A stretch of DNA of 64,000 nt from assembly GCA_964057225.1 (NCBI GenBank), contig OZ059898.1, positions 15,624,001-15,688,000 of the forward strand. Reading direction: 5' to 3'. Each line of letters opens with the position of its first letter. Within the stretch, counting starts at the first letter, position 1. This DNA comes from Auanema rhodensis. Its lineage: Eukaryota; Animalia; Nematoda. The translations under genes were made by a program, and so were the position numbers. The notes under the pieces are model-generated. The model was not told the DNA's origin and searched no databases. It worked only from the letters and a program-made list of their open reading frames with translations. Below, in pieces: positions 42,965-62,290 of this stretch.

Positions 42965-45900
42965 TTATTTTCCTGATAGCTTCTCAATGTCCTGTCGTCG
43001 CTGAAAGTTTTTTAATTAAAAAAAAGTTTTTTTCATATAACAGAAATACTGACCTGTCGAGATTCCTCAGTTATTTTCTGATCCAACACATTCTTAACTG
43101 TTGTCACAGATTCAGCTAGTTTTCTGATTGCAGTCTTACATTCATCCACGTCACGACGTAAAATCTAAATTAAATTCAGAATGAGAATAAGAATATTAGT
43201 AAAGCATATACAGCATCATCTGGCATCTGATGTTGCTTCATCTGTAATCGTTGGAATGCTTCCTGTAGCTCTTTGATTGCTAAGTATCTATAAGAAAGAG
43301 AAATAACAAAAGACTTAATCGAAATAAATCATTAACAATCTCTTCAATAATATATAAAGGTATTGTTTAAATAATGTTTTGACTAACCTTTCTTCCTCTT
43401 CTTTGTCAATACGTGAATTAAGTTGATGTTTCAAGTTGTCAGCTTTAGCTGATAGTTCATTTAACTAAAATAATATAGTTAATTTTTGTTTTTTTAAACA
43501 TAATATGATATTATAATGTAACCACATCCACTTCACTAAATTCCTTTAATATTTTTAAATAATAAAACATACATCTTGAGGTATTTGTTTTTCAACTTTA
43601 TCACGTATTCGTTCCTGTGTTCGTTCAAGTTCATCCTAAAAAAATATAAATAACATAAATTTGTAAATAAAAAAGGAAAATAGGAATTACCTGTACACTA
43701 TCAATCTTAATCATTTGAGCTTTAAGCTTATTCGTATGTTCATTTTCGTCTAAATTAACCATTTTCTGGGCTAAATCTCGTTTATCATGATATAAGCCTA
43801 AATAAGAAGAAAAATAATTAAATCGAATGGCCAGTAGATTAAAGCAAGAAAATTCACCTGTTTGAACACGAGTCATCTTCTCTTCTAATTTCAAAAGACC
43901 TTCCATGCTCAATTTATTTTTGTCAGCAGCAATCGCTTCCATCTCTCGTCGCAACTTAAAAAGTGACAGAATTTTCTATTTCATCAAACTCATTGAAAAG
44001 CTTCAAACAGGAACAACTCTCTAATTAAATTCTCAAGAAATGGCTAACGGTCTTAGATTAATGCGAAGAAGAAGAAATCAAATTGCCGTTAAAGCTCTGG
44101 TACTGGCTAGTTATGGGCGAGCAAGTGAACGCTTGCTTAAGCATGGTATCAGGATAAGTTCTTCTGCTCTATTCCTTATCTTTCTGTTTTTTCTTCTAGC
44201 TTTCCATCGTTCCCTCGTTCCTTATTTCGTTAGCGCCCCCCCCCCCTCTCTCTTTCTCCCTTTCTCTCTTCTACTTAGTCATTTTCTTGTTGGATTCTCA
44301 ATCTCTTACATTTATATTTTCTTTCTATATGCTCTTAGCTTATTTTTTTATTTTCGTAGGACCGGCCCGTAGCAGCTATCACACGGAATGGCGCGAAACT
44401 CAAAATTTATTGGAATTTTTTGTTCCTCTTCAGAGAGATGTCGTCGACACAACTTGGCTGTCAGCCATCATCTGTAGTTCTGTGCCATAGCTTCACATCG
44501 AAAAGATTGATTATGGGCAAAAGCATACGAGCCTACGGAAGTTATTTTTTGCCGGTTGACTGGATTGAAAGAACAGAAGATTGAAAATCTCTGGGCTTTT
44601 CACGTGGTGATCTATGCCATAAGATGGAATTGGATAAAGAAGTAGAGAGAGAGACAGAGAAAACACGTCGAAACAGAAAAAAAAACGAAGTTGATTGCCA
44701 AGAAATATTTAGTGAATGGCCGATGAAAGTTCAGGTTTTATGAGCAATGTGAGGCAGGATCAACGACAAGCACATGACTGGTCATCGACCAATTCCTCAA
44801 AATCTCCGCTTTTTTAGTGACTTTTTTTGTTTCTTAATTGAATATTGAAATGGATGAGAGGAATTGTTTGTGTATGTATCTATATTCTAAGCTGAAACTG
44901 AAAAAGAAAGGAAAGAAGAAGTTGAATAAGAAGTAATATTGAAATGAATTGATAAGATAACTTAAGATAAGAAAGTTAATTCTGGATATAGTATATGTAT
45001 ATATAGATTGCTTGGTTTATAAGATTTTCAATTGAAAATACGTTTATATAAGAAGCATATTAGGAAATATTGTATATATGTATACACTATGTTACTCAGC
45101 TGTTAATCATTATACTACTAATGCCCTTATATGGAAAAAATAGATTCAATCAAGAATAGGTTGATAAGTTGTCTTAGAAAGACAAGACTCGCTTTCAGGC
45201 GATTGTCATTTGAGATTCATCCAGATAGTTGAATATGTATTATGTTAGTCATTCTAATCAAATTTAATAAAGAAAATAAAAGATTTTTTTGATAAAAAAA
45301 GAAAAGAAAAAAGGATTGTACCTTGAGCATACCCATTCCACCAATTAATGCACACATTTTTGGATTGAATATTAGAATTCAATTAACAAATTTTTAGAAA
45401 TGAATAGAATCCGGAAAGGACAGACTGACGATAGACGACACTGATGATGATACTGCTACTGCTGGTGATGATGATGACGATGCTGATGATGATGAAGAGG
45501 AGGAGGAGAAGAAGGAGTATAGTGATACTGGAGCTGATGATGAGAAGGAGGAGGAGATGGAAACGAAGATGATCATATGCTTTAAGCCATGAAAAAGAAG
45601 CTTAAGTGAAGAGGGAGGAACGCGGCGGAAAAGGGGAGGTGATGGACTAAGAGCCGAAATGATGGCTAAAAGGACGTATAGTTAACCAAGATTAGAAGGT
45701 TCACTTTCATGTTCTTACTCATAAATTTTCTTTCTTTTTGAATATGTATTATGAGTCTTTGTCGCTCAAAAGCCAAAATCTTCTTTTCGACCAAAAACTA
45801 GCCTTTCCTCATTAAACTTCTTAGTAAAAACTTCTGAACGCCAAAGAAATGAGCACATATTCGAAGTTTTATTAGGTTAAAATGGCTTTCATTATCTTCT

Positions 45901-48285
45901 AAAGGCGAACAGAAAATTTTTTTTTCAGGTTTTAAGTCCAAAGATCTTATAACTGGAAGAGGAAATACTACTGCTATCATCAAACTTACAGCATCAATAT
46001 CAAGGGCTGGCATTCGGGAAACACCTTTTCCTGATTTCACATCTTCTATTGATTTGCTCATTCCACCCATATAAATATTTATTCTTTCTTCAACTTCTTG
46101 GATTTTAGACAAAAGACCTTTTTCATGTAATTTCCTAAAATAATGGTAAATGCAGCATAGTTTTGGAACTTAACACCTAGATTGTATTTCTGCATTCATG
46201 AGTTTGTCCATCTTTTTGTTACCTAATTCCAGATGATGTTCTAAAGCAGCTAATGCTTCATTAACCTTTTGAAAGCGATCTTTCTGTTTTGCTCTATCCA
46301 CCTGAAACATGAAGCTCAAGTTTCAAAACATCCAACTTTCAGTACTTGAATTTGTTTATTCAATGCTTCAATATGATCTGATTGAGATTTTGTTAAAAAC
46401 TCCAGTTTTCTCTTGGAATCTCTATCTAATTCATTTAGATTATCATTATGAATACGAACAGCCTGAAACAAAATAAATGAATTCAGATAGCTTTCTATTC
46501 TTGAATTCTTAAATTAAATTTTTTTACTTACAGATTCAAGAGAAGAAAATTTATTATTAAAATCATCACGTAATCTCGAATTCGTTTCGGTCATATTTCT
46601 TGTAACTTCTGTTGTTATTAAATTTATTTTTTCATTTAAACGTTTCGCTTCTTCAGAAAGTTTTTCCTTTAAAAATTGAAAATTAAATAAACTTGTAAAC
46701 CTATTTCAGCATACTTTATCCATATCACCTTTCTTTGTTATATTATTCAAAATATCTGTTTTACTACGATCTTGTTGTCGAATAATTTCTTGTAAACGAT
46801 GAATACTGAAAATTTGAAGAAGATGAGAGAAGATAAAGTTGGAGAGAACTCTAGAATATCAGCATAAGCTTTAGCCTTACTTATCTCCAAGTTGCTTCGC
46901 TTCACGATTTCTCTCACTTTTCTCATGATCAAGTTGTTGTTTCAATTGCATTATACTGCTATGTAAATCACGAATTTTGTTATCTAATTGCTGAGTTGAA
47001 TTGGCTAATTTCTGAAAAATTTATTTGAAAGATTAGATCAGGTATTTTCAAAAAAAAAAGAAAAGAAGAAATTAATGGAAACCGATGGATCGACAACTGG
47101 TCGATTTTTAATTTCATTGTTGATATGCATTAAATCTTGTAGATTTCGATCAAGAGTTGTTCTCAAGCTGCTTATATCATTACCCATGGCAATCACCTGC
47201 AAAAAGAAAAGAATATAGAAATTCAAAAAGGAAAGGGGAAGAAATGAATTACTTTTCCATCAACAGACATAACTTGTCGACGTAAATCATCGACATCGCG
47301 ACTTCTGAAAATATATTTCTCAGCTGCAGAATATCATTTATGGCTATCAGTATCAAATAATATTATGAAGCAAATATGTGTGATCCATGCTGTCCAATTT
47401 TCGTTTTTTTTTCTTTTTTTTTGGTTAAACCAAGACATTAATACATCAATGTAATCCTTTTGAGAATGTTAGGAATTACCCGTTATTTCCTGAAGTCATA
47501 ATTTGTCGTTGAAGAGCATCGTGATTTGCTTCTAATCGACGTCGTGCAGCCTGAAATGCATCTGTTTGGTGTGTGCCAGCCAATTCGTATGAAATAACCA
47601 AGGAAAAAACTGTCACGTAAAACAAAAAAACACAAAAAATATGAGAGAAAAAACCTGTTCAGCTGATAAAAGTTCTTTGTTATGACGTTGAAGATCTACA
47701 ATTTGGGATTGAAGTCCTTGAATAGCTGAGTTGTCTGGACGGCGATCAACGACAACTGGTGGACGTTGATTCAGGTCGTGTGCCTGCTATCGAGAAAATT
47801 CTTGGAAATTCCAAAATTTAAAAAAAATAATTAGATGACCACAGATGAAAAGTATGATCTACATGTAGAAGGAAAGAAACACTCAGAAAGGAAAAATCTC
47901 AAACACGGGCAAAAGTGCTGCATTTCACTCAAAACACCCAAATACCTTAGCTGAATTTAAAGAGGATCTAGATCGGAAATCCATTGAACTGGACCGCTGA
48001 TAAAAATTTTTTTTTGAAATATTAAGGAAAATCTCTTTTAAGTTATTTTTATTTCGAAAGAATTAAGTAAAAGCTTACTTTCACCCCTTCCTTAGGCTGT
48101 CTAGGTCCCTGACCAGAAGGTCTGAAATATCAAAATAATCTTAACAAATTTCTTAATAAAAGTAAAAAACAAGTTATTAGTATGCAGATCAAAATAGATT
48201 ATAAAGGACGGCATGCAACTTACGCTAATCCTAATATGATGTCTTTAGCTGTATCTCTAGCTCCTCGATTTTTTTTGTACGACAT
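42965..48285 (-). CDS. long multi-exon coiled-coil protein (possibly CCDC154/FAM81-like), with a 2035-nt intron at 43955-45989
   Basis: Starts MSYKKNRGARDTAKDIILGLA after a ttttag acceptor. Heptad-rich exons (QGLQSQIVDLQRHNKELL, KIRDLHSSIMQLKQQLDHEKSER, MEGLLKLEEKMTRVQ). Ends KTAIRKLAESVTTVKNVLDQKITEESRQ/RRQDIEKLSGK*. The junctions I checked keep frame; the family call is from memory only. Confidence 0.85.
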
Positions 48286-49556
48286 CTTATTTCTAAAACA
48301 ATAAAATATTATTAAAAATAGATTTTTTTATAAAAACAACAAAACAAAACAAAAATATTTATAAATTGAACTCAGCATACGCATGCTATTGCGGTTGTAT
48401 GTTGATTTACATCATGAGCTTTAGCTTATAATGCTTGTAGCTTGCGTATCTTAGCGACGTCACTATAGTAGAAAACCTGAAAAGTGGACAAAAGAAGAGA
48501 AATCTTTATTGCCAAAGTTTCAAAAGTATAATATCTGAGGTTGATTTTTTTTAATATTCATAATCTTCTCAGATAGTTTATGTAAAGTGCCGGGTGAAAA
48601 TTAGCTAATAAATTAAGTTTTTGTAAGTTTCAGATCTGAGCTCTCATCTGATACTTCTTCATAGTTTGATTGTTTATAAAATTTTCGCTATTCTAATCGC
48701 ATATCAAAATGCAAAGCTGTGCAACATACTTTTCTTCACCGTATCTTCTATTGTAACCTCATTTCCTACAGTAATCTCTAGAGTTCAATATGAGAAAAAG
48801 TTTAAAACATCTTTTTGCTTCTTCTTCGAGCAAAGATAAACGAACTTTCTTTGCAGGAATTTACATAAAGTGAGTCTCTTTGTTGTATTTTTTTTGTTTT
48901 CGCCGTATTCTTTTCCGTCTGTACTAGTTAAGAACTAATACTACAACTAAAAACTACAACTGAGATTATATCTTATATTATTGACAACTTTGTCTTTAAC
49001 ATTTACATCGGAAATACTTAATCGTTTTTTTTTCTTTTCTTTTTAAAGAAAATATGTTGTTAGATGGATGGTTGGTTGGATTGAAAAAACATGATAAAAT
49101 TCTAATAATATTCATTATGAACTATCAGAAGTACTTTAGATATTCATACATGTATACAATATATACAACGAACATTTTCACCGATTTTATCTGCTCAAAA
49201 CTGGACTTTGGTCATATTTGACTGATCGCTCTAACAGTTTATGTTTTTCTGATCCTAGCTACGCCATTTACTGGAACAAGGACAAGATCTTAAACTGGAA
49301 TTGGTAGAAAGCATAAGCTCAAGGAGATCAGTATGCTCATAGTACGCAATGAGTAAAGAGTGTGTGGGTGTGTGGATCATCACCATATATGTACATATAC
49401 GGAAATTCATTAAAGAAATCAAATAGCAGTTTATGAGGAAAATCCACCCAAAAGGACTTTGTAGAACTTAATCGTTCCAGATTTATGAAACGGAAGAGAG
49501 CAGAAAAGGCTATCTTGTGCTGCATGACAAGTTGAATTATTATTTTCTTGTTAACG

Positions 49557-50281
49557 TTATTGTCGACTATTCAATTCATTATTGTTCAGGTGGTTGTTAA
49601 TAATTTTAGCAGACATCGAGTGAATTCCAAGCTCGTATGCTTTGTTCTAAAATGAGAAAATTTGAAACTTGAAGAACATAGGCTAATTCTATTACATGGA
49701 ACTCTTTTTCAACTTGTCGTTCTCTTGCGAGTTCATCGTCAGTCATTCCATTCAAAATTCTACGCTAAACATGAATAAGATGACATAGAGCATGAAAAGA
49801 AAGTTTAAACTTACCGTCTGCTTTGTTAATTTCTTATAATGACGTTCTCCTGGCAAGGTAAAAAGAAGTTTGAACTTTCTTTGTTGTACAGCTTGCACCT
49901 GAAACAAGGAGAATGCTGGGTTTTTCAGTTTTTCCATTAAAATTACAATGATCGGCTCGAGTTCTATTCTCTTGTCTAACCATTTTTTCAGTAACATCAT
50001 ATTATGAATCATATACTCATGAGTACGCTGAAATTATAATTTCAATGAGGAAAAATGTCGAAAAATCAAAAAGTCAAGAATGTACATGGGTATCTTCATT
50101 TGGATGCTTTGTGTTGTTTGTTATAGTCGCAAGTTTCTTTGCATGACTCAAGGACTTATCCTCAAGAATACGGTATGTCTGAAATCATTATAAGTATGTA
50201 GGTAAGGTCAACTTTTCCCAAAAATGAAATGTAACTACGAACGAAAGCGCTTACTACTTGCATTCTTTCAGCAGAAGTCAT
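49557..50281 (-). CDS. hypothetical ~150-aa protein, 6 coding exons (5' end uncertain; frame is open back to the acceptor at ~50326)
   Basis: MTSAERMQV/TYRILEDKSLSHAKKLATITNNTKHPNEDTH/RTHEYMIHNMMLLKKWLDKRIELEPII/VQAVQQRKFKLLFTLPGERHYKKLTKQT/RRILNGMTDDELARERQVEKEFH/NKAYELGIHSMSAKIINNHLNNNELNSRQ*; five short GT-AG introns. Confidence 0.75.
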
Positions 50282-51395
50282 GTTGTGATGAATGACATGA
50301 TGATGATGATTGCTTGGCCGAGCATCTGAAGTTTATAAATTGTCTTTTATTTTAAGTTAAAACATTTTTAAAATTTATCAAATGATCAGGTTCAAACCAT
50401 AGATCACTTACAGATTTTTGTATTAAAAATGAAAAACTATAAACACAAAAATTTTGTAAGAAAATATTAAAAAGGACAAATTTTAAAAAAATTTAATTTT
50501 AAACTTACTGTTAATTATGATACTTTGTGAAAAAATTACAAAAATCGACAATAGAATAAGAATCATTTCTTAATGAACAATAAAATCAATATGTGAACAA
50601 GTATCTTCGTCCAACTAATAATAGACTGTTCACCTGGGTTAACTTTCTGCAATGAACCAGTGTCGAAGAGGATAGAATGGGGTAAGCGGGAAGGTCAGTT
50701 TATAGAAGAAACTGGAAAAAATACTATTTTCATGATTCTCAGCATGTCTAGGCTTGTTTCATGAGTTACATGTACTAGCCTATATACATATAATTCATAT
50801 TATTACAGTTTAGAAAAAAAAATGAGAATAATAATTTTTAATTGGAAATTAATCTGAGAATTGTTTGATTTCGAAGGAATGTATATTTTGTGTAGTCTAG
50901 ACAACTATCACTGAAGAGTAATGACGCTAAAAGATCAGTAATTGAAAATAAAACAGAATCAAACAATAAAAATAGTTTTGCTGTTTCTTTTTGTCACAAT
51001 AAACTTGCTACTCTAATGACAGCAGTCACTGGTAGTTATTAGCATAACATCCGTACCACGTTTACGTGGAACATCCCAAAGAGACAGTATCCATTTTTTA
51101 TAATATTTACGACGTGATCGGTTGAATTTCTTTGTTCCGTTTTCTCTCTGTATATATATAGCCAAAAAATTATTTATGATCGTTCGATGTATAATATAGT
51201 AATAATTTATAATGAAAAAAACATTTTTACAAAAACAAAACATTCTTCACAGAAAAATACCCATGCAAGTTATGAATTTTGGCTTGTGACTAGCTATTTG
51301 CAATATATGCAATTGTTTTATTTAAGAGGATACGAGGTCTTTGTATCCATTACCAGCAACAGGCCTCCTTAAAACAACCGTTTTTATGAAGAAGG

Positions 51396-54300
51396 TTATG
51401 AAGGCTTCATATCTGGCCCGACATCTGAAAATGTAGACGTTATGTTTTGTAAAATAAATTTTTATAAATACCGGTAGCCCGTTTGCTACGTGGCCTTCTA
51501 ACACCTGGAGGTGGTTGAGCTTCGATGAGGGGCATCTCTGGTGGTGGACTTCTGCCTCCATTAGACCCTCCTGATGAATAGTAAACATGTCCACTGCGAC
51601 TATGTCGTCTATGAGAGTGAGAGAGAGGCTCACCAAAGCTAAAAAGTGGTCAATAGTGAAAAAAAAACATTTTAACTATCTCTTACTAATCATAGTGTGC
51701 TGGTGGTGGGGCATATCCAGGAAGGAAGTTGTGCATGGCCATTGGTTGACGACCATGACTTCTCGACCTTCTACGGCTTGAAACGGTGCCGTCTTTCTTT
51801 TCTTTACGTTCGCCGTCACTTGGAGATGGATCCCTCATGAGACGATCAGATCGACGTCCCCTTGATGGTTTCTTGACGATTGGCATTTGATCCATCATGA
51901 AGTCTTCTTGAGGAGACATAGTTCTAGTGTGTCGAATAGGTCGCTCATCTGCCCAAAGAAGTTCTTGAGTAGCAGGACGAGCAGCAGCCTCGCCATCGAA
52001 AGATGTGTTTGATAAATTAGGCATTTCGAAGCTACTCTCTGGCGCCTTGGGCTGAGATAATTGGAGTTCTTCCAATTTTCTCTTGAGCTCGAAAACTTGA
52101 TGGAAGCTCTTGTGCTCCAACTTAGCAAAGTCAGCACGTACTTTCTTCAGCTCAGCATCGAGCTAAAAAGTAATAATTCATGAAGTAACTACAGAAAATG
52201 ATTAACCTCCTTGATTCTGTCTTCTTTTTGTCTCTTTTCTTCTTGAAGTTCAACCAAATTTTCCCTAAGTTTCTGAAGATCATCTCTTAACTTGTTACAA
52301 GTCTGGAATACTCAGAATAAAAATAGTTTAAGAAATCTTCGAGCATACTGCATCTCGTTCTTCTAACTTTCCGCCGTTTGCATTGATAAGAGCAAGAAGT
52401 TGATCAGCTCTTTCATTAGACTTAGTCTTTTCAAACTTTTCTCTTTCCAAATCTTCCCTTACAGTATTGTACAATTCTTCTATCTTCTTCTTCTCGTTCA
52501 CTGCTCTCTCCATATCTTGCCTTGAAAATATATATAAGAATATCAGAAAAGAAACAAATTATCATACTTGGCAAGTTGGCATTCTTGTTCAAGTTTGCTT
52601 TGGAGGGCCTTCAACTTTATTATTTCTCTGATGTCGGCGGTAGGGGAAGATTTTTCCTTCTCTTCCTTTTCTTCTTTCTCTTCATACTCTGGTTCATCAC
52701 CAAAGTCGGACCAACCTCCAGATCCTCCGGATTCTGCATATATATGTTTAACAAAACATATTGTGTTCATGTTACTTACCAGCAGCATCAGCATCCTTTC
52801 GCGCAGGCTCTTCAATACACATTTCAGAGGCTACTTTAAGTTCTTGTTTCAGTTGCTCGTTAGCAGTTACTAATTCAATTTTGTTCTGTTTCAGGTTCGA
52901 AATCTCAGCTTCTTTCTGGCGCACAGTCTCCATGGACTTGTCATAGTCAGCAATAACATTCTTCAATTTATCGCGTTCAGCCTTACAGTCAGCTTCAATT
53001 CTTGTAAGAGCTTGGTGAGCTTCAACAAGTTCCTTATTAACTTTAGCTAATTCATTAGTAATGTTCTCCACTTGCTGTTCAGCACTTTCAGATCGTGTCT
53101 CGTACTGCGCAAGCTAAAAACAACTGGTACGCATTATTCTACAATTGGCGTCGCACCTTTTCTCTTTCCTTATTCAGAGCTGACTCGAGCAATTCCTTCT
53201 CATTTTTTTCGCGAGCAAAATCAATTTCCATTTGGGCAATTCTTAAAGAGGAAGTTAAGTTTTTTTAATACAAAAATACCTGTTTGTTAGTTGACTATTT
53301 TCAAATTTAACTGGTTCTATCTCACGGCGTAAAGCATTAATCTCATTGACGTATTCCTGACTTACAGCGGAATTATTACCAGCTCTGAAAAAAACAATAA
53401 TATTTGAAGTTTCAGATAATATTTTAATTTTACCTCTTCAATTCATCCTCTCTGATAAGAATTTGTCCCCTAAGTTGATCATTCTCTACTTGAAGCTCTT
53501 TGTTTTTAGTACCAAGATCATGTGCTACTCTGAATAAATATGGTAAATTTATCAAGAAAAACTTTATCAAACCTGCGATCAAAATAGAGAGAATCCCCAT
53601 TATCAGACAAAAAGTAAGATACAAGATAGATGACAAAAGCAGTAATAACAAACAAGATGTTCAAGATTATACCTACGCCTGAAGTATACAAACATTAAAA
53701 AAACACAAGTTACTAATTATTACCTGCGTCACTGAGATCTCCAACTGGAACAATAGATTTGACAATACCTATCACAGATTTCATTATATTTCCTAAGACA
53801 CTCGGTTCAACTAAGAATAAATATAAATAAACTGCAAAAAATATGGTTATACCTGGGATAGAAGCAGTATCGGGAATAGGAACAAACTTATCAGAGAATC
53901 CTTCTTCGAATGGATTAGCTTTGAAAGGATCTTCCTGAGGTGGCGGTGAAGAAGCAATCTTACCACAATCATCTCCATCACAAACACCCTAGATATTATA
54001 AGATTAATGATATCAAAGATAAAAAAGGGTACCTTATTAAAATCATTGTCCAATGGTGGCAGTTCAGAGGCTACCTCTGGTGGGGCATCGAATACACTAG
54101 GAACTGTTGTGGCTTCGAATGCACTAGGAACTGTTGTAGCTTCGATTACACTAGGAGCTGTTGTGGCTTCCAAAGGAATAGTTGGTTTAACTTGTTCAAC
54201 AGGAGGGGAAACAGTCGTAGTTAACTAAAGTAAAATAAAATCATAGCTCACAATAATTTTAAAAACAGGGAAATACCATATCAAGATTAATTGTAGGAAT

Positions 54301-56009
54301 TGTAGTAGCTTCAGGTGCGGGAGGAGTTCGGGGAAGAGATTTAAATTCGGGAGTATTAGTAATAGGTTCGTTCGGAATAGGACTTGGGGCTTCGATTTCA
54401 TTTATAATTTGAGAAGGTGTGACTGTTTCAATAGTCAAGGGTGGAAGAGTAACTGGCTCCTCAGTAGTTACCTAGAAAATACATAAAATACAATAACGAT
54501 TAGGTTTGTAACTAACTTCAACAGGAGGTTCAGCAACAACAGGCTGTTCAGTAACAACAGGAGCTTCAGTAACAACAGGAGGTGCAACTGTGGTGACAAC
54601 CTCCTCTACTACAGGTTTAGGATCCTCAGGGATTGTTTCCTCAATCTTGGTAGGCATGCTCTCTCTCTTTTCACGTATTTTTGCTTCCGCTTCTACGGCG
54701 ACTTCCTTACCTTCAGCAATATCATGCTCTTCCTTAAATATTAAATAATTGATATCGAAATATAAAACGGAAAAACTAACCAAGCTCTTTATAATTTCAG
54801 CGTCTTGCTTCATCATTTCCTCGATTTCCTTATCCATTTGAATGTCAAACTAAAATAAAAAAAAAACATAAATTATTAGTTTTACGCGTAAATTACATCA
54901 GATTTTTTATCTCCATTCATTGCCGGAAAGCGAACATCCAAACCTTCTTCATCGAGATATGGGTTAGGAACTTCGGTTGGAGTAGGGGAGGCCTCCTTTT
55001 CTTCCACTTTTTCCACTGGTTTCTCTTCTTTGGGCTCCTTTTCTCCAACTACTTCAGGCGTTACTGGAACCTCTGGAGTTGCAATAGAATCAGCAACTAC
55101 AGGAGGCTGTTCCGTGATCACAGGCACTTCTGTCTTGGGTACAATTGTTTCAGCTGTTTCAGCTGGAGCATTGTGTGCATGAGCATGATCTTCATGAGAA
55201 TGCCCATGATCATCGTGGCTATGTCCATGATCATCGTGACTATGTCCATGATCACCATGACTATGTCCATGCCCACCGTGACTGTGACCATGTGCACCGT
55301 GACTATGACCATGTGCCTGATTGGGCTGGGGTATTGGAAACTCTTCCGGTGGTGGAAGCTTTTGTTCAGCAGCATAAATTTTAGCCTATAAAAGAAGAAT
55401 GGTTTTCCAAAAACAAAACCAAAAGATTTACCTGAACATTGTAATCCCGCACAAGATCAAGCTCTGCATTTATAGAACCTTTAACACAATATTTACACAA
55501 AAAACCTTCATCGGACTGTATACCTGCTATCTTAGGTCCTCCGCTTGTGGGATTTTGAATAACAGTTTTTAGTTCAGTCTTTGTGACAATAGCATCGCGC
55601 AAAAACTCTACGTAAGGCCCTTTATCCACACTCGCTAAGAAAACTACTCCTGATTTTGTTGGATCTCCCAAAATCTTGAAAAACATTATTATAAAAAAGG
55701 CGAAAACATTTAACGTACTCTTCCTTCAATAATATCAATCCTATCACTGAATTTTATGGCAGTCACTTCTATAGACTTATCCTCGCTAGCCTCCAAAAAT
55801 GTAGGATGAGCCGAGGGTATATTTCGAATAAATTTAGCAGTGAATAAAACTTCTTCAAATAGATTTTGATAAACAGATATTGAAGAAAACTACTTACTAT
55901 TACATATATCATCGCCACATATTTTAGTTTTTGGAGTAGCAACACGCTGTTTAGCAGATATACAGGTAAAAGTTAATAAATAAATCTTTAAAAAATTAAT
56001 TAATATCAT
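51396..56009 (-). CDS. TANGO1/MIA3-family ER-exit-site cargo receptor (similar in architecture to C. elegans R148.3/tngl-1), about 20 exons
   Basis: Signal peptide MILINFLKIYLLTFTCISA; MIA/SH3-like domain (KICGDDICN.VLFTAKFIRN...PTFL...IEVTAIKFSDR.DIIEGR...GVVF); His-rich repeat; long P/E/V/T-rich lumenal region; amphipathic helix plus TM helix (GVGIILNILFVITAFVIYLVSYFL); two coiled coils; Pro-rich tail (YSSGGSNGGRSPPPEMPLIEAQPPPG...KPS*). Confidence 0.85.
54090..54170 (-). repeat. coding 27-bp tandem repeat x3 (EATTAPSVI / EATTVPSAF / EATTVPSVF) in the TANGO1-like lumenal region
   Basis: Three near-identical units, actaggaactgttgtggcttcgaat-like on the + strand. Confidence 0.85.
55173..55313 (-). 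repeat. coding 21-bp tandem repeat encoding (HGHSH-xx)7
   Basis: HGHSHGA HGHSHGG HGHSHGD HGHSHDD HGHSHDD HGHSHED HAHAH, in frame in the TANGO1-like exon. Confidence 0.9.
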
Positions 56010-56239
56010 TATTGTAAAATGAACTTACTAAAAATGTTAATGAATGTTTTATCACATTCATTTTTTTAACAAAAAAAAATGAAAATTGAAAAAAAGCTAC
56101 AATTTAACAGACTATCACAGATTCAGCTTCTCAATGGTTCTGAAATAACTAAATTCAGGTAATTTAGGGCTCTTATTATAGTAATCAATTTCAAAATATT
56201 TAAAAAATAATATTAAAATACTTAAAAATCGTTTCTGAT

Positions 56240-56320
56240 AACCGGTGACGTTGTACACCGTGACGCTGTAGCCTACGCTACGTGTATCGAACGGACGGTT
56301 ACTTCGTTGGACATAATCCA
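56240..56320. promoter_or_regulatory. GC-enriched probable promoter island between the divergent TANGO1-like and TMEM254 genes
   Basis: ccGGTGACGTtgtacaccGTGACGCtgtagcctacgCTACGTG: repeated TGACG/ACGT cores in otherwise very AT-rich DNA, ~230 nt upstream of the TANGO1-like ATG. Confidence 0.45.
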
Positions 56321-57169
56321 ACTGTCATACTTATAATCAAAAAACTGTTATATCCTGCGAGTTATATCACAAGATATTACGAATATAATTTTCAAATTAG
56401 CTATTTTAAACGATAATCTATTCAAATATTCTCGTTATATATATTTAACTAAAACAATACGCGTTTCGAAAAATAAATTGACATGCATGAAAACATGCAG
56501 TCATACGATTTCAATTTAGAAACATATCTTATATATGAAAATTAGTTATGCTATTATTTCTACTTATTTTAGTAGGTAGAAGAATAAGTTTTCAGAAAAA
56601 TGCTTTTAGAAATTAGAATTATCGAATGAAGTGCTTCTCCAATAATAAAACAATGTTGAAAGGAATAGCATATCAATGTCATTAAACCCGTTCAAGTTGT
56701 TGTTCATATTAATTTTCCTTTTAAACATATGATTATTGCCAAAAAACGGTTGTAATACGTTGTTGAATGTTTCATAATCTTGTTTATTTTTGATGCCAGT
56801 TAAGCTGTACTGTTAGGTAATCATAGTATCTATCATTGTTAAAAAAGCCTGGTTGGCGCGAAACAAAAGTAAAAGCTAGTATTTTATTGCTATTTTTTCC
56901 TTTAATAAGATGACTTTTGAACTTTTGTTCCAAGTTTTGCTTCAATCTTTCATCTCTTCTGAGAAAAACAAACTGATTTGACCCACTTCAAGAATTTCAC
57001 ATAGACATGCGTAATACGATTAGTTCGCCAGATTATGTTTAAATCAAAATATTTAAGTTCTAACTCTAACTATATTATCCTATTTTTTTTAAATATTTTA
57101 ATATGAATTATTCTCGATCTCAAAGCTGGTTATGTTTCATACTAGATCTTGACTTTTTTCTTACAGACA

Positions 57170-57624
57170 ATGGCTGCAACTACTCGTAGCAGTTACTTTA
57201 AGACTCCAGCTTATTACTGGTGGTTGATAATTCCTTTCGGACTTTTTCTAAACTTCGTAAGTCTTGAAACTGTGATATGATTAATGAGCATGTGCTTTCA
57301 GCTTGCCTGGTACTCTCCAGAATCGCTTAAAACACCATTTTTGCCTGTAATCGGACCTTTTGCATCTCAAATTGGGCTAGAATACCCATTCGCGGTTCAG
57401 ATCACCAACCTATTCGCTTTGCTAGCTCATATTGGAGAAGCTGGTTATGCATATCAGATTGCTTCCAAATGCAAAATGACGTCAGTCAAGAAACCAGTTT
57501 CGGAAATAACAAAATAATTTTCAGATTTTTCACCAAATTGATGTGGACCATCCAAACTTTCATCCTAGGCTTCCCATCGCTATCTTTGATCAGCCGCCAT
57601 CAAGCTCGTAATAAGAGACGTTAA
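57170..57624 (+). CDS. TMEM254-like (DUF4499) membrane protein, 121 aa; exons 57170-57256, 57302-57480, 57525-57624
   Basis: MAATTRSSYFKTPAYYWWLIIPFGLFLNF/LAWYSPESLKTPFLPVIGPFASQIGLEYPFAVQITNLFALLAHIGEAGYAYQIASKCKMT/FFTKLMWTIQTFILGFPSLSLISRHQARNKRR*. TMEM254 motifs YF..P..WW, H..EA.YA and W..QTF..G..SL; acceptor 3 nt before the ATG. Confidence 0.88.
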
Positions 57625-58072
57625 GCATACTCTCCTACATATGATATTAATAAAAAAAATTCCAAACTTACGTGTTATTATGTGCCAATTTTTTAAATTA
57701 ATAAATATTATTTAATTTATATATAATATTTTTCGAAATAATTGAAGAATTTAATCGTTCTATAACTATAAATAATTAATTGAAGATATTCTTATATCCA
57801 ATTGATGATTTTTCTCTGTCTGTTTATCAAGAAAAATCTCATAAATCATCTGTTATGAGAGATATCGATATGTTTGGAAGATCTGCAATTTCATAAATAA
57901 TACATTATGGCAATGATTTTATGTAAACAACAACAATGTTTTTGTATTTTAATTTTATTAAAAGATTAACAACAGTTTCAGAACAAAATGATACAATTAT
58001 TAAACTATGTGTCATTAATATATTTACAAGATTAAAACTTTTTCGTTCTTCATGTGATAATCTTCACTCTCT

Positions 58073-60383
58073 TCACAATTCTTTTTTCTTTTCTATATTT
58101 AAATAATTGAATAACATCATAACTGATGGTAAGCCCACTAAGAATGTTTGAACAAACCACTTGCAACTACATGCCAGACTAGAAATTTAATGATTTTAGT
58201 AAAATCGTAAATTGAAAATGATATTTGTACCTGAAGCGTGCTTTATCACAAAGTATCATAACGTAAATGCCTTCTGCTAGATGAGTCCCAATAAATAATA
58301 CATTCAATATTAAAGCTAAAGATGGATATTGCATTCCAAACCAAGCAGCATATTCTCCAACGATAGGAAGAAGTGGATGGTTCAGAACTTCGGGATTCCA
58401 CCACATATACTGAAATTAGTATTGGATAAGTTAAAAATAATATAAAAATAATTACAAAGTTAAAAAGCATCAACAATGGTAAGACCATCCACCATCCAAT
58501 ACATGGGCTATCAAAATAATCGGGAGGAGTAGGCAAAAGCTTCCTTTTGCTCTCTGTATTACTTGGATCGTATTTGATGCCTAAATATTCCCTTAATGTC
58601 CGAGCAACATTGAATGACACTATTCTGAGAAAACAACGAATATTAATGATTTTTAAAGATAATTCAAATTCTTACCCTTTTACAAAGACGGTAAGAGTGA
58701 CATAGTTAGGCACAAACGATATTACTTTCTCTTTCAGAATGTCATCCACCATCCGACGAGAGCATGAGTCAATACTCATGAATGGGAACCACCTGAGAGA
58801 CCATTTTTTAAAAAATTACGAAAATTTACTTTGCTTTTAAAAAAAGTGAATTTTATGATATTTTTTCATAAATATTTGTACAAAACAAGAATTATGAGAA
58901 AAAAGAAGAGCACAAACATAAATAAAGAATAGTTGTGCAAAGTTTGAGTATAGTTTAATTCATGAATATCTTTGTCTGAGCATAATGCAAATAAAAAACT
59001 CAAATTAAATTACATTTTCAAGAATATTATAATGAAATAAAGATAACAAACGTGCAAGTTGGACGAAGACCTGCATTGCAAACCATTGGAGTTCGTGCAA
59101 AATAAGGACATATCTAAATGAACACGCTGATGTTTGTATTGAATAGTTATATGATATGCTGTATTATAAATCCAAGAAATAGTTAATTGCCTTATTTTAT
59201 AGGAATTTACAACCGGAATTTACGTCTACAGAAAAACGACCGCACTATGTTTTGGAGCGAAACATAATGGAATGGGATTGGGATCCTCATTAGCATAGAG
59301 TTCACGTAAAAACGTTATTTTTGGGTCAATCAGATAGTTGTTGTCATTTGGTTTCAAGGCAAAATTCAAATACATTGCAAACGACATTGATGGGAAATCA
59401 CAAAAGTCTGACGAATTGTTCCAATTAGGTTTACTTACCGTCGTACATTTTATTCCCTCTAATCCCAAATCTCGTAGTTCCATTTGAAGACATTCCATTA
59501 CTCCTCGGACAGCAAATTTGCTTGGACTAAAGCAGATTGTTTGGTTTGCTATTAAGTACATATATCAACTGAACCAGTAAGCTAAACCATATGTTTCTCC
59601 ATAAAATCCAGCTATTGATGCAATAGAAACTATCTGGCCATCATTTCGTTTTTCCATTTCTCCCAGAAATGCCCGAATCGTCTGAAGCATCAAGAGATGA
59701 TGAATATAGAGAGAATATTAAGACAGACATACATTAACAGTACCAATCACATTAACGTCAAAAGATCGTCGAAGCTCTTCTGATGTAAGATCCATGAAAA
59801 ACTTAAACGCAAGCACAGCAGCATTACACACAACAATATCAACTTTTCCTAAAAGATAAACAACAGTCATAAGCTTGTCCAGAACATTCGCAACACACCA
59901 AATTTGGCTTCTACTTCACGAGCTATATTATTCATATTATCTGCATCACTAATATCACATTTAAATGCTGCTGCTTGTCCTCCCAGATCTAATATCCCTT
60001 TGACACAAGCCTCTACGGAACTCTGAGAATAATCTCTATTTAACCTGCCAAATATGACATTGAGAAGAATATTACCAAATTCACATCTAGACATGCGACA
60101 TTGGCTTTATAATGAATAGCAAAAATTTCGGCCATTCGTTTGCCTAAGCCTGAGCCGGCTCCAGTAATCACAATAGTTTTTCCAGTAACATCCTATCAAA
60201 CAAAACAAAATACGAAAAAGAATTAAGAATAGAAAATAAAAAAAATAAAATTGAAAATACAAGAAAGCAAACCTTCTGTTTCAGATTAATCCATCTAAAT
60301 ATATCTCTAGGTATGTCAATTAGAATTAAATGCAAAATGACACCAAGAGTTGCAAGTAGTTTAAATTCCCATTTATTATACAT
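58073..60383 (-). CDS. SDR16C (RDH10/SDR16C5/HSD17B11-like) dehydrogenase fused to a C-terminal TMEM254/DUF4499 domain (C. elegans dhs-29-like)
   Basis: IVITGAGSGLG, FKCDIS, VDIVVCNAA, FDVNVIG, QIVSIASIAG, catalytic YCPSK (split by an intron), ICPYFARTPM. Reads on in frame into DYFDSPCIGWW...THLAEGIY...KWFVQTFLVGLPS...EKKKEL*. Confidence 0.9.
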
Positions 60384-60849
60384 ATCACGTGAGATCTAAA
60401 ATAAAATACAATAATCATCATGTTTATTATCAAAATTTTAGAAAAATAAAACATTTAAATATTTAAATATTTCAATTGAAAATTAAGAATCTTACAAGAT
60501 GAATATTTTGGATATTTGGACGAACTACAAGTGGAAGAGCTTTATCATTCATTACTACCAGAATGATTGATTGAAAAAGTGATTTTCTTTTGTAGTAAAT
60601 GAGTCAATAATATGTTAACTTGTTTCATTTATCATCTATTTTCATCTAAAACAACTCATTTCATCCAAAAAAGAGAATCAAATAACAAAGCTATTTTTAT
60701 ATTTGAACTTGCAACATCAAATAAGAAATGTTCTAGAAAAAAAAAAGTTATAAGATAGAACATTTGTCAAGAGGTGCTGAAGTTATGAGAAAAGAGAGAG
60801 AGAGAGAGAGAGAGAAAAAGAGAGAGACATATACTTATAAGGACAAAAT

Positions 60850-62290
60850 AATATTCTTAAGCATTAACATTTGAAATAACGAATAGTTTGAGAAAGATGA
60901 ATATGGGAATGACCCAATTTCTATAGTAATCGACAGATGATCAGCATAGGCATGAAAGTAACCCGATAGAAGCTTCATACAGTTATGGGCTTGTTTTTTT
61001 GATTTGATAAACATGATAGTGATTAATATTGATCTGGAGAGTGGGATAACGCTCGAACATCTTTGTACGAACATCAGTAGTCCGACTGTCCGTCAAGGCC
61101 GTCATTCAAGTAAACGGGTCACCAACACACAAAAATCTCACATTTTGGGACAATTTTCTACTTGACAAAGATAATCTGCAATACATTGTAACAGTCCCGC
61201 ATAGTCTTACTCTTGGGTTTTTCCAATAGACAGAAGGCCAGACAGATATATTTCTGGGCGTTAAGTGCAAATTTCATAACAAGTACAGAAAGTTAGTGAA
61301 GATGATTGAACACAATTCATTTCCTAAATCCTGATTTCAATAAATCTCTATAATAGCGGTATTCGTCAAATGACCTGATATCAAGCTCTTGAGATACAAC
61401 TGCAGCACTAGTTTTCAAGACAAATCATTTCAAGTTCGTCGCGTATTTATAGAGAACATCATAAAGAGATGCTGAACTTTGATATTTGAGCGAGGGCAAA
61501 GTCATCTTACAGACTCGGGTTTGTAGAAATAACTGAGAAAAAGGAAAATAAGTAAATGACGTCATATTCTAATAATGATTTAGTTTTATAGTTTAGATAA
61601 GCTTTCAAATATGCATGAAAGTTTCATATTTCATGCTAAAAAAGTGAGACACGTACAGGCAGTAGATCACAAAAGTCTGCATAATCCATGAGTTCCAACA
61701 TATAGCGGCTTTCAAACGAAGATACATATGACAAACTAACATGATATCTATATCTTCAATAGTATAAAATGTTTTTTCCTGACATATTACGTCATTTCGT
61801 GATCTTGTTACGTTCATTTTCAGTTTTTTTGCTGCATAAACACATGATAAACATAATTTTTCCGATATATTCATGAAATATCACCCGCTTTGCAATGTCC
61901 TTTCTGGCTATATTATCCCCGAAAATTCCGTTTGAGCTTTGCTGATTTTTCGTAAAATATGCCTTTTCATGCACAATTTGAAGCCACCCAAAAAGAAAAA
62001 GAGCAATTTCTCAGCCAGCATTTCCGAACCATTTAAGTTGTTTGTGTATTAAATATTCTGTGATGAGAATTTGAAAATATCTTGAGAGTGAAATGATACT
62101 CAGCTAGCTTTCAATACTGCTTGACGTATGTTCTTCCTCTTCAGCTATTTCATCATAGTTTCAAAACTCTCGTAAATCTGAATATTAAACTTTACTCGGA
62201 ACAAAAGATAGATATGCTAGAAGTATCACAAGGTACACCGGATATATCCGAATCATAGAAACGGCTTTTCCATATTCCATCTGCTACCTA
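60850..62290 (-). pseudogene. higher-complexity, coding-like segment with splice-like boundaries but stops in all frames; possible decayed gene or mobile-element relic
   Basis: Exon-like pieces, e.g. RYMLELMDYADFCDLLP|gtacg and ctcag|LFLQTRVCKMTLPSLKYQSSASLYDVLYKYATNLK*FVLKTSAAVVSQELDIRSFDEYRYYRDLLKSGFRK*; no intact model could be assembled. Confidence 0.25.

What the first reader, a model, noticed from the sequence alone, without database searches (positions are those of the whole stretch)
57170..60383. SDR16C-TMEM254 fusion gene tail-to-tail with a stand-alone TMEM254 paralogue
Seen: the dehydrogenase reads in frame into a TMEM254 domain, and ~450 bp past its stop a free TMEM254 gene ends on the opposite strand. 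The two domains align throughout (YF..P..WW..LNF/FNF, W..PE.L..P.LP..G, G..YP, H..E..Y, W..QTF..G.PS) and share both introns (phase 0 after NF; phase 2 before the last helix), so they derive from an old inverted duplication. Known: TMEM254 has no established function; from memory, C. elegans dhs-29 has the same fusion. Inference (Rosetta-stone logic): TMEM254 is a membrane partner or oligomeric subunit for retinoid/steroid/lipid dehydrogenases, and the free copy may hetero-oligomerise with the fused one. This is the best candidate for an undescribed system here.
Basis: partly seen in the sequence, partly recalled or inferred. Interest (0 to 1): 0.75.

Follow-up and report, generated by a model that had tools for sequence, protein, structure and literature searches.

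The report
Nematode dhs-29 dehydrogenase-TMEM254 fusion plus free copy
This is a real, expressed worm gene that joins a lipid/retinoid-type dehydrogenase to the small membrane protein TMEM254, next to a separate TMEM254 gene copied from it; the fusion is already catalogued across nematodes (C. elegans dhs-29 group), so its value is as a clue to TMEM254's unknown function.

Summary
On the minus strand, 11 GT-AG exons (60383..58073) encode a 431-aa SDR16C-type dehydrogenase that runs in frame into a TMEM254 (PF14934) domain. The transition lies inside exon 9. On the plus strand, a 3-exon, 121-aa free TMEM254 gene (57170..57624) ends 448 bp from the fusion's stop.

Spliced transcript contigs from four runs of one study carry all 10 fusion introns removed in a single contig. 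They also show both free-gene introns removed, with an SL1 leader.

The two TMEM254 parts align without gaps (29-30% identity, z about 36) and share both intron positions and phases.

The fusion is not undescribed. About 35 nematode proteins of clades III-V have adh_short+TMEM254, including C. elegans Q19843 and the 'dhs-29' entries of Pristionchus and Brugia.

The closest genome found, Auanema sp. JU1783, keeps the same gene pair in tandem on one strand. The window's tail-to-tail layout is therefore a gene-sized micro-inversion, not evidence for an inverted duplication.

The tree and one intron suggest that the free copy budded from the fused gene within Rhabditina. This is not proven (AU p=0.10).

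The functional link between TMEM254 and SDR enzymes stays an inference. It is strengthened by a plant 3beta-HSD+TMEM254 cluster and complicated by fungal DUF2470+TMEM254 fusions.

The parts
58073..60383 (-). SDR16C-TMEM254 fusion gene (dhs-29 orthologue), CDS span, 11 exons, 431 aa
   Evidence: Gene model. One spliced contig per run spans all exons. 80% identical to Auanema P0043 and 52% to C. elegans P0036.
58676..60383 (-). Exons 1-8 (60383-60273, 60192-60076, 60022-59899, 59848-59733, 59681-59575, 59526-59439, 59113-59052, 58792-58676): N-terminal hydrophobic helix plus SDR catalytic domain
   Evidence: adh_short hits on exon pieces. Motifs TGAGSGLG, CNAA and YCPSK, and hydrophobic segment aa 7-25. 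The orthologue's nearest solved structures are HSD17B13 and HSD17B11.
58456..58624 (-). Exon 9, the junction exon: SDR C-terminal tail helix, about 20-aa linker and first TMEM254 helix in one exon
   Evidence: Translation. Flanking junctions 58624|58676 and 58409|58456 are seen in all 4 runs. The tail motif R..Y is nearly invariant in 34 orthologues.
58231..58409 (-). Exon 10: TMEM254 middle part with the invariant H..E
   Evidence: Pfam PF14934; alignments.
58073..58178 (-). Exon 11: last TMEM254 helix (W..QT..G.PS) and stop codon TGA 58075-58073
57984..58072 (-). 3' UTR of the fusion mRNA, as far as the contigs reach
   Evidence: Contigs end at 57984-58026 in the four runs.
57170..57256 (+). 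Free TMEM254 gene, exon 1
   Evidence: junction 57256|57302 in all 4 runs.
57302..57480 (+). Free TMEM254 gene, exon 2 (H..E motif)
   Evidence: Pfam PF14934 at 26.2 bits, above the cutoff of 23.
57525..57624 (+). Free TMEM254 gene, exon 3 and stop codon
   Evidence: junction 57480|57525 in all 4 runs.
57160..57166 (+). Trans-splice acceptor (ttacag) of the free gene; the mRNA carries an SL1-type leader end
   Evidence: Run X3 has the loose end CCAAGTTTG just before 57165. It matches the 3' end of nematode SL1; that identification is from established knowledge.
57625..58072 (.). 448-bp convergent intergenic region holding both 3' UTRs; no coverage between about 57712 and 57983
   Evidence: tables 2 and 8.

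Best explanation
The locus holds the orthologue of nematode dhs-29. This is an ancient gene in which an SDR16C-type (HSD17B11/13- and RDHE2-like) NAD(P)-dependent dehydrogenase is permanently fused, within one exon, to a three-helix TMEM254 membrane module. Beside it lies a free-standing TMEM254 paralogue.

Shown:
- Both genes are intact, spliced and expressed in the same samples.
- The fusion is conserved across Rhabditida clades III-V.
- The gene pair is conserved with Auanema sp. JU1783, where it is in tandem.
- Only the free gene is inverted between the two genomes.

Inferred, moderately likely (about 0.55): the free gene arose by duplication of the fused gene's three TMEM254 exons within Rhabditina. 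That would be a domain 'fission by duplication', originally in tandem, later flipped in this lineage or moved elsewhere in strongylids.

Inferred mechanism (about 0.35): the dehydrogenase domain is held on the ER or lipid-droplet membrane at both ends, by the N-terminal hydrophobic helix and by TMEM254. TMEM254 would be more than an anchor. Its invariant intramembrane His, Glu, Trp and Gln-Thr would form a binding or hand-over site for a lipophilic substrate (retinoid, sterol or lipid aldehyde) that the SDR oxidises or reduces. The free copy would supply the same module in trans.
For: - Gene models and motifs.
- Single spliced contig across all 11 exons in 4 runs, and an SL1-capped free mRNA.
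- adh_short+TMEM254 in about 35 nematode proteins, including C. elegans Q19843 and the 'dhs-29' entries of Pristionchus and Brugia.
- Auanema locus with the fusion followed 321 bp later by free TMEM254 on the same strand.
- Window 61200..45300 is collinear with that locus except for the flipped free gene.
- In the tree, the five clade-V free copies fall inside a clade of clade-V fused domains with 97/94 support.
- The phase-2 intron is shared by clade-V fused genes and all free copies. It is absent from the fused genes of Aphelenchus, Steinernema and Bursaphelenchus.
- Invariant H, E, W and G, and near-invariant Q, T and S, in 28 TMEM254 domains.
- Confident models: free copy pLDDT 95.4, whole fusion pLDDT 84.6 and pTM 0.77.
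- Plant cluster of 84 proteins with 3Beta_HSD+TMEM254, whose TMEM254 part matches structurally at TM 0.75.
Against: - AU tests do not reject the alternative that all fused domains form one clade apart from the free copies (p=0.10). They also do not reject a single origin of the free copies (p=0.13).
- The direction of the inversion is unresolved, because the Diploscapter and strongylid loci are not syntenic.
- The free copy evolves fast: 48% identity between the two genomes, against 71% for the fused domain.
- The RNA evidence is assembled contigs from one study. These cannot exclude an additional TMEM254-only isoform.
- No interaction, localisation or substrate data exist.
- Fungi fuse TMEM254 to a heme-binding DUF2470 domain, so the module is not SDR-specific.
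- The plant architecture rests on an automatic cluster annotation. I could not check it on an actual sequence.
Confidence: 0.6

Rival explanations
1. TMEM254 is only a generic membrane anchor or ER-retention module. The fusion merely tethers the dehydrogenase, and the free copy has an unrelated role, with no specific partnership with SDR enzymes.
For: TMEM254 is fused to unrelated partners in other lineages: fungal DUF2470, a heme-binding domain. In most nematodes checked, no free copy lies near the fusion. In strongylids the free copy sits elsewhere, beside LSM14.
Against: Invariant polar His and Glu, and W..QT, inside the helices of all 28 domains compared, from nematodes, Oikopleura and unknown eukaryotes. 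This is more conservation than an anchor needs. The SDR already has its own N-terminal hydrophobic anchor. A second SDR-superfamily fusion is indicated in plants.
Confidence: 0.3
2. The free gene is the ancestral animal TMEM254 orthologue. The fusion arose when an SDR16C gene read through into a tandem copy of this neighbour, so the adjacency seen here and in Auanema is the ancestral state, not a secondary budding.
For: AU tests do not reject fused-domain monophyly (p=0.10). The tandem same-strand layout in Auanema is what a read-through fusion would need. Free TMEM254 is the usual form outside nematodes.
Against: The ML tree nests the free copies within clade-V fused domains (97/94). Free copies were found only in clade-V species among 1.84 billion representatives. 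The phase-2 intron is shared with clade-V fused genes but missing from three clade-IV fused genes. The adjacency was seen only in the Auanema lineage.
Confidence: 0.25
3. One reading: the pair stems from an old inverted (tail-to-tail) duplication, and the free protein hetero-oligomerises with the fused one.
For: Tail-to-tail layout with 448 bp between the stops. Both genes are expressed in the same four samples.
Against: The closest genome found has the two genes head-to-tail. Every flanking gene is collinear, so the inversion involves the free gene alone and happened after the duplication, or in the other lineage. No inverted repeats beyond AT-rich low-complexity matches flank the gene. Oligomerisation is untested.
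Confidence: 0.12
4. The fusion is an annotation or reading artefact: two separate genes, an SDR and a TMEM254, that only appear joined.
For: None found. The only caveat is that assembled contigs can in principle join overlapping transcripts.
Against: The SDR tail, linker and first TMEM254 helix lie in one 169-nt exon with no stop. That exon's two flanking splice junctions appear in the same contig in all four runs. The same single-chain architecture is predicted in about 35 species.
Confidence: 0.02

Closest known systems
C. elegans Q19843 / NP_509294.1 (chr X, 427 aa; 'NADP-retinol dehydrogenase' / 'Transmembrane protein 254'), with orthologues named dhs-29 in Pristionchus pacificus and Brugia malayi
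   Same: Same two-domain architecture (PF00106+PF14934), similar length, and 52% identity over the full length. The same intron after the 'NF' motif.
   Different: Different neighbours: the C. elegans and C. angaria genes lie next to a propionyl-CoA-carboxylase-like gene. No free TMEM254 lies within 10 kb there. That this C. elegans protein is the locus called dhs-29 (F27D9.6) is from my memory plus the names of its orthologues; it is not a tool result.
Auanema sp. JU1783 CAI4229345.1 (fusion) and CAI4229344.1 (free TMEM254)
   Same: The same gene pair in a collinear neighbourhood. The fusion is 80% identical and the free copy 48% identical.
   Different: The two genes are on the same strand, 321 bp apart, in Auanema. 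In the window they are tail-to-tail.
Human SDR16C enzymes: HSD17B13, HSD17B11, SDR16C5/RDHE2, SDR16C6
   Same: Classical SDR with an N-terminal hydrophobic anchor. The nearest solved structures to the orthologue are HSD17B13 (E 2.4e-39) and HSD17B11. Mammalian SDR16C6 is about 35% identical over the SDR part of the C. angaria orthologue.
   Different: The vertebrate enzymes end after the SDR tail and have no TMEM254 domain. The substrate of the nematode enzyme is unknown.
Vertebrate TMEM254 (free protein of about 120 aa, no known function)
   Same: Same Pfam family and size as the free gene here. ESM Atlas feature matches of 0.90-0.91 to chordate TMEM254 clusters.
   Different: The nematode free copies may be secondary derivatives of the fused domain rather than direct orthologues.
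Plant proteins of about 492 aa with 3Beta_HSD/Epimerase + TMEM254 (ESM Atlas cluster, 84 members, Streptophyta)
   Same: An SDR-superfamily steroid-type dehydrogenase carrying a C-terminal TMEM254 module.
   Different: An extended-SDR (3beta-HSD) family rather than SDR16C, so probably an independent fusion. It is known to me only from an automatic cluster annotation.
Yeast Erg28 scaffold for Erg26/Erg27 (works-like analogy only, from established knowledge)
   Same: A small multi-helix ER membrane protein that tethers SDR-type sterol dehydrogenases or reductases to the membrane.
   Different: No sequence or fold relation was shown. Erg28 acts in trans and has four helices.

Membership tests
Classical SDR, SDR16C subfamily (HSD17B11/13-like) | Rossmann cofactor motif TGxxxGxG near the N-terminus | tested here: met
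   TGAGSGLG at aa 47-54.
Classical SDR, SDR16C subfamily (HSD17B11/13-like) | Catalytic Ser...YxxxK and an NNAG-type motif | tested here: met
   IASIAG...YCPSK at 191 and CNAA at 125 (a variant of NNAG). Y218, K222 and S205 are invariant in 34 orthologues.
Classical SDR, SDR16C subfamily (HSD17B11/13-like) | Closest characterised relatives are SDR16C members | tested here: met
   For orthologue P0043 (80% identical to the window protein), the best PDB hits are HSD17B13 at 2.4e-39 and HSD17B11 at 2.5e-34. For the C. angaria orthologue P0029, the best non-nematode animal hits are mammalian SDR16C6.
Classical SDR, SDR16C subfamily (HSD17B11/13-like) | Dehydrogenase activity and substrate | not testable with these tools
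   The name 'NADP-retinol dehydrogenase' in databases is an automatic annotation.
TMEM254 (Pfam PF14934) | Significant match to the family profile | tested here: met
   The free middle exon alone scores 26.2 bits (cutoff 23). The fused middle exon scores 18.8 bits, on a partial piece. Full domains of the orthologues score 50-68 bits.
TMEM254 (Pfam PF14934) | Invariant H..E in helix 2 and W..QT...G..S in helix 3 | tested here: met
   HLAE/WFVQT in the fused domain and HIGE/WTIQT in the free protein. These residues are invariant in 28 domains.
Nematode dhs-29 orthogroup (SDR16C+TMEM254 single chain) | Both domains in one transcript and one reading frame | tested here: met
   One contig spans exons 1-11 in each of 4 runs. 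The junction lies inside exon 9.
Nematode dhs-29 orthogroup (SDR16C+TMEM254 single chain) | Full-length similarity to named members | tested here: met
   50-52% identity over about 430 aa to the Caenorhabditis proteins and 80% to Auanema. The fused-domain tree groups the window with Auanema (99/96).
Rosetta-stone functional pair (TMEM254 with SDR-type dehydrogenases) | Fused in some lineages, separate genes in others | tested here: met
   Fused in nematodes. Free TMEM254 clusters in chordates and SDR16C enzymes without TMEM254 in mammals.
Rosetta-stone functional pair (TMEM254 with SDR-type dehydrogenases) | Independent recurrence of the fusion | tested here: inconclusive
   The plant 3Beta_HSD+TMEM254 cluster is known by automatic annotation only. 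Fungi fuse TMEM254 to DUF2470 instead.
Rosetta-stone functional pair (TMEM254 with SDR-type dehydrogenases) | Physical or functional interaction of the separate proteins | not testable with these tools
   No multimer modelling or experimental data were available.

The most novel reading that the evidence does not exclude
TMEM254 is a dedicated intramembrane subunit for SDR-type lipid, sterol or retinoid dehydrogenases throughout eukaryotes. It would have been captured by fusion at least twice (nematode SDR16C, plant 3beta-HSD). In rhabditid nematodes it would have been re-released as a free gene by duplication of the fused exons, so that the free protein works in trans with the fused enzyme. 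This would assign a function to human TMEM254, as a partner of HSD17B11/13, RDHE2 or RDH10/DHRS3.
Probability: 0.2. Interest if true: 0.7.

Novelty: new member of a known kind. Interest (0 to 1): 0.36.

Why it matters
TMEM254 is conserved from nematodes to humans, and no paper in the searched library gives it a function. A fusion to an HSD17B13-like dehydrogenase that has been kept across a large part of Nematoda, with a second such fusion indicated in plants, is a concrete and testable lead.

HSD17B13 and its relatives matter in liver lipid and retinoid biology, so a missing membrane partner would be of interest.

The locus also gives a clean small example of two evolutionary events. One is a probable 'fission by duplication' of a domain out of a fused gene. 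The other is a single-gene micro-inversion between two closely related genomes.

The gene itself is ordinary for a nematode and is already present in public protein records.

Tried and rejected
- **Word search with the free-gene ORF.** It found nothing. The collection does not hold this genome's proteins, and the length window excluded others. This is not evidence of absence.
- **Scan of bacterial/archaeal genomes with the TMEM254 alignment.** I wanted gene neighbourhoods of the actinobacterial TMEM254-like cluster.
- **Solved structures.** No sequence match for TMEM254. No fold match either: Foldseek best E 3.4 and VIA-align best Z 4.3. The fold gave no functional hint.
- **Inverted repeats around the flipped gene.** Only AT-rich low-complexity pairs were found, so there is no clue to the inversion mechanism.
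- **Outgroup synteny to polarise the inversion.** The Diploscapter and strongylid free genes sit in unrelated neighbourhoods.
- **AU tests on the origin of the free copy.** Inconclusive.
- **ER-retrieval signal.** The C-terminal KKEL of the fusion looks like a KKXX signal, but it is not conserved in the orthologues, so I dropped the idea.
- **Second ESM Atlas query with the fused domain.** It added nothing.
- **Paper searches for DUF4499 and F27D9.6.** Both returned nothing. 'dhs-29' appears only in gene lists.
Full report
**What is in the sequence**

The region is AT-rich (about 31% GC) and has short GT-AG introns of 44-80 bp. I read the three frames of the minus strand, located the splice sites and assembled an 11-exon model.

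- The exons are 60383-60273, 60192-60076, 60022-59899, 59848-59733, 59681-59575, 59526-59439, 59113-59052, 58792-58676, 58624-58456, 58409-58231 and 58178-58073.
- The product is 431 aa. It has an N-terminal hydrophobic segment (aa 7-25), TGAGSGLG, CNAA and YCPSK. Its C-terminal part carries HLAE and WFVQT.
- Exon 9 (58624-58456) encodes the last conserved helix of the dehydrogenase, a linker of about 20 residues and the first TMEM254 helix. No intron separates the two halves.

The plus-strand gene has three exons: 57170-57256, 57302-57480 and 57525-57624. It encodes 121 aa.

Pfam places adh_short on the exon pieces in collinear order and TMEM254 (PF14934) on both middle exons.

The two TMEM254 units align without a gap over 117 residues. 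There are 35 identities and a score of 221, against 29 +/- 5.3 for shuffled sequences. Both introns fall at identical alignment positions and phases.

**Is the fusion transcribed?**

The sequencing-run search found four runs of one study that hold 42-47% of the sampled words. That is roughly the exonic share of the stretch. I laid them on 3,601 bases, within the operators' 6,000-letter limit.

- All matching contigs are at least 99% alike to the window, and all are spliced, so these are RNA assemblies of the same species.
- In each run one contig of 1344-1377 nt runs from about 60397 to 57984-58026. All ten introns are removed exactly at the modelled sites, including 58624|58676 and 58409|58456 on either side of the junction exon.
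- In each run a second contig of 416-458 nt covers the free gene with both introns removed.
- Run X3 has the loose end CCAAGTTTG just upstream of 57165. From established knowledge this is the 3' end of the nematode SL1 spliced leader. The free mRNA is therefore trans-spliced at the ttacag acceptor in front of its ATG.
- The two 3' ends (about 57711 and about 57984) do not overlap.

Contigs cannot exclude an extra TMEM254-only isoform, and the evidence is one study.

**How widespread is it?**

A word search with the free ORF found nothing.

A profile of the two middle exons, run against 1.84 billion representatives, gave 24 hits. Among them were long proteins from Aphelenchus avenae and Globodera pallida. 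Pfam confirms these as adh_short+TMEM254.

Two further searches listed about 35 nematode proteins with PF00106+PF14934:

- Caenorhabditis: C. elegans Q19843/NP_509294.1 (427 aa, chromosome X), named both 'NADP-retinol dehydrogenase' and 'Transmembrane protein 254'.
- Named dhs-29: Pristionchus pacificus 'dhs-29' and Brugia malayi 'BMA-DHS-29 isoform a'.
- Others: Parascaris, Meloidogyne, Globodera, Ditylenchus, Aphelenchoides, Bursaphelenchus, Rhabditophanes, Acrobeloides, Panagrolaimus, Steinernema, Nippostrongylus, Cylicocyclus, Mesorhabditis and Auanema.

The window's protein is 52% identical to the C. elegans one and 80% identical to that of Auanema sp. JU1783. The gene is thus an orthologue of a fusion that is ancient in Rhabditida (clades III-V) and is already in public records.

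The literature held here has no functional study of TMEM254 or dhs-29.

**The neighbouring free copy**

Free nematode TMEM254 proteins turned up only in clade-V species. These are Auanema, Diploscapter, Ancylostoma, Cylicocyclus, Cooperia and Ostertagia. There is also an Anisakis fragment that may belong to a fusion gene.

In Auanema sp. JU1783 the fusion gene is followed 321 bp downstream, on the same strand, by the free gene.

A translated comparison shows that window 61200..45300 is collinear, in reverse orientation, with that Auanema locus for every gene. The single exception is the free TMEM254 gene, which matches in the opposite sense. The two genomes therefore differ by an inversion of just this one gene.

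- I could not polarise the inversion. The Diploscapter locus and the two strongylid loci are not syntenic, and the strongylid copies both sit after an LSM14 gene.
- No second TMEM254 lies within 10 kb of the fusion in C. angaria, C. elegans, P. pacificus, Mesorhabditis or A. avenae.
- No meaningful inverted repeats flank the flipped gene.

'Inverted duplication' is therefore not the best reading. A tandem duplication followed by a micro-inversion fits better.

**Origin of the free copy**

I built a maximum-likelihood tree of 39 TMEM254 domains over 122 columns.

- The five clade-V free copies fall inside a clade that otherwise holds only clade-V fused domains (support 97/94).
- The window, Auanema and Diploscapter free copies form a clade (98/96).
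- The window and Auanema fused domains are sisters (99/96).

The phase-2 intron before the last helix is present in clade-V fused genes and in all free copies. It is absent from the fused genes of Aphelenchus, Steinernema and Bursaphelenchus.

Both points suggest that the free gene budded off the fused gene within Rhabditina. However, AU tests do not reject fused-domain monophyly (p=0.10) or a single origin of the free copies (p=0.13). I hold this at about 0.55.

The free copy evolves much faster than the fused domain: 48% against 71% identity between the two genomes. It keeps all the invariant residues.

**What TMEM254 might do**

In 28 domains His, Glu, Trp and Gly are invariant, and Gln, Thr and Ser are nearly so. 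These residues lie in the second and third helices. That degree of conservation is more than a passive anchor needs.

- AlphaFold2 gives a confident three-helix model for the Auanema free protein (pLDDT 95.4, pTM 0.83).
- The whole Auanema fusion gives pLDDT 84.6 and pTM 0.77, with low confidence only at the N-terminus and the linker. Inter-domain contacts were not available to me.
- No solved structure resembles the fold.
- The dehydrogenase part is closest to the lipid-droplet enzymes HSD17B13 and HSD17B11.

The ESM Atlas structure search matched three relevant clusters:

- the nematode fusion cluster;
- a plant cluster of 84 proteins annotated 3Beta_HSD+Epimerase+TMEM254;
- a bacterial TMEM254-like cluster.

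The plant cluster would be a second, independent fusion to an SDR-superfamily steroid dehydrogenase. I know it only from the automatic annotation.

Against specificity, a published survey reports fungal proteins that fuse a TMEM254-like domain to the heme-binding DUF2470 domain (PMC11014987).

My working mechanism, at about 0.35, has two parts. The enzyme is pinned to the membrane at both ends. The conserved polar site of TMEM254 binds or hands over a lipophilic substrate, and the free copy offers the same module in trans. This is comparable in concept to Erg28 tethering Erg26/27 in yeast. That comparison is an analogy from established knowledge, not a tested relation.

**Verdict**

This is a new member of a known kind. 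Interest is moderate to low for the locus itself. The functional lead on TMEM254 is the part worth following.

Noticed in passing
window 60945-61176 (and L003 7005-7233): A block of about 230 bp, 560-790 bp upstream of the fusion gene's ATG, is about 78-80% identical to Auanema sp. JU1783. That is better conserved than the neighbouring exons at the DNA level (about 68%). It has no Rfam match and no folding signal (z about -0.15 on both strands). It may be a promoter/enhancer or an unannotated 5' exon.
   Followed up: partly
window 45300-61200: This whole stretch is collinear, in reverse orientation, with Auanema sp. JU1783 contig CALQYR020007447.1 (L003 7000-19770). The window therefore comes from an Auanema-like rhabditid.
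   Followed up: partly
window about 51250-56160, minus strand: A large multi-exon gene, head-to-head with the free TMEM254 gene, is orthologous to an Auanema gene whose 1168-aa product has no Pfam family. It contains low-complexity, Pro/Glu/Val-rich and coiled-coil-like stretches.
   Followed up: no
window 59213-59435: Low-depth contigs (depth about 2.5, against 15-28 for the mRNA) in runs X1 and X2 cover part of the 325-bp intron 6 of the fusion gene. These are probably unspliced precursor RNA or a retained intron.
   Followed up: no
L009 11086-20397 and L005/L009 upstream: In the strongylids Ancylostoma ceylanicum and Cylicocyclus nassatus the free TMEM254 gene lies just downstream of an LSM14-family gene. 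In A. ceylanicum it also lies just upstream of two acyl-CoA thioesterase genes.
   Followed up: no
L002 and L010: The fusion gene's neighbours AMMECR1 and MTP18 are shared between Aphelenchus avenae and Steinernema carpocapsae. This is clade-IV synteny and differs from the Caenorhabditis neighbourhood (propionyl-CoA-carboxylase-like gene, MFS, reprolysin).
   Followed up: no
window 60790-60830: A (GA)n microsatellite lies about 400 bp upstream of the fusion gene's start codon.
   Followed up: no
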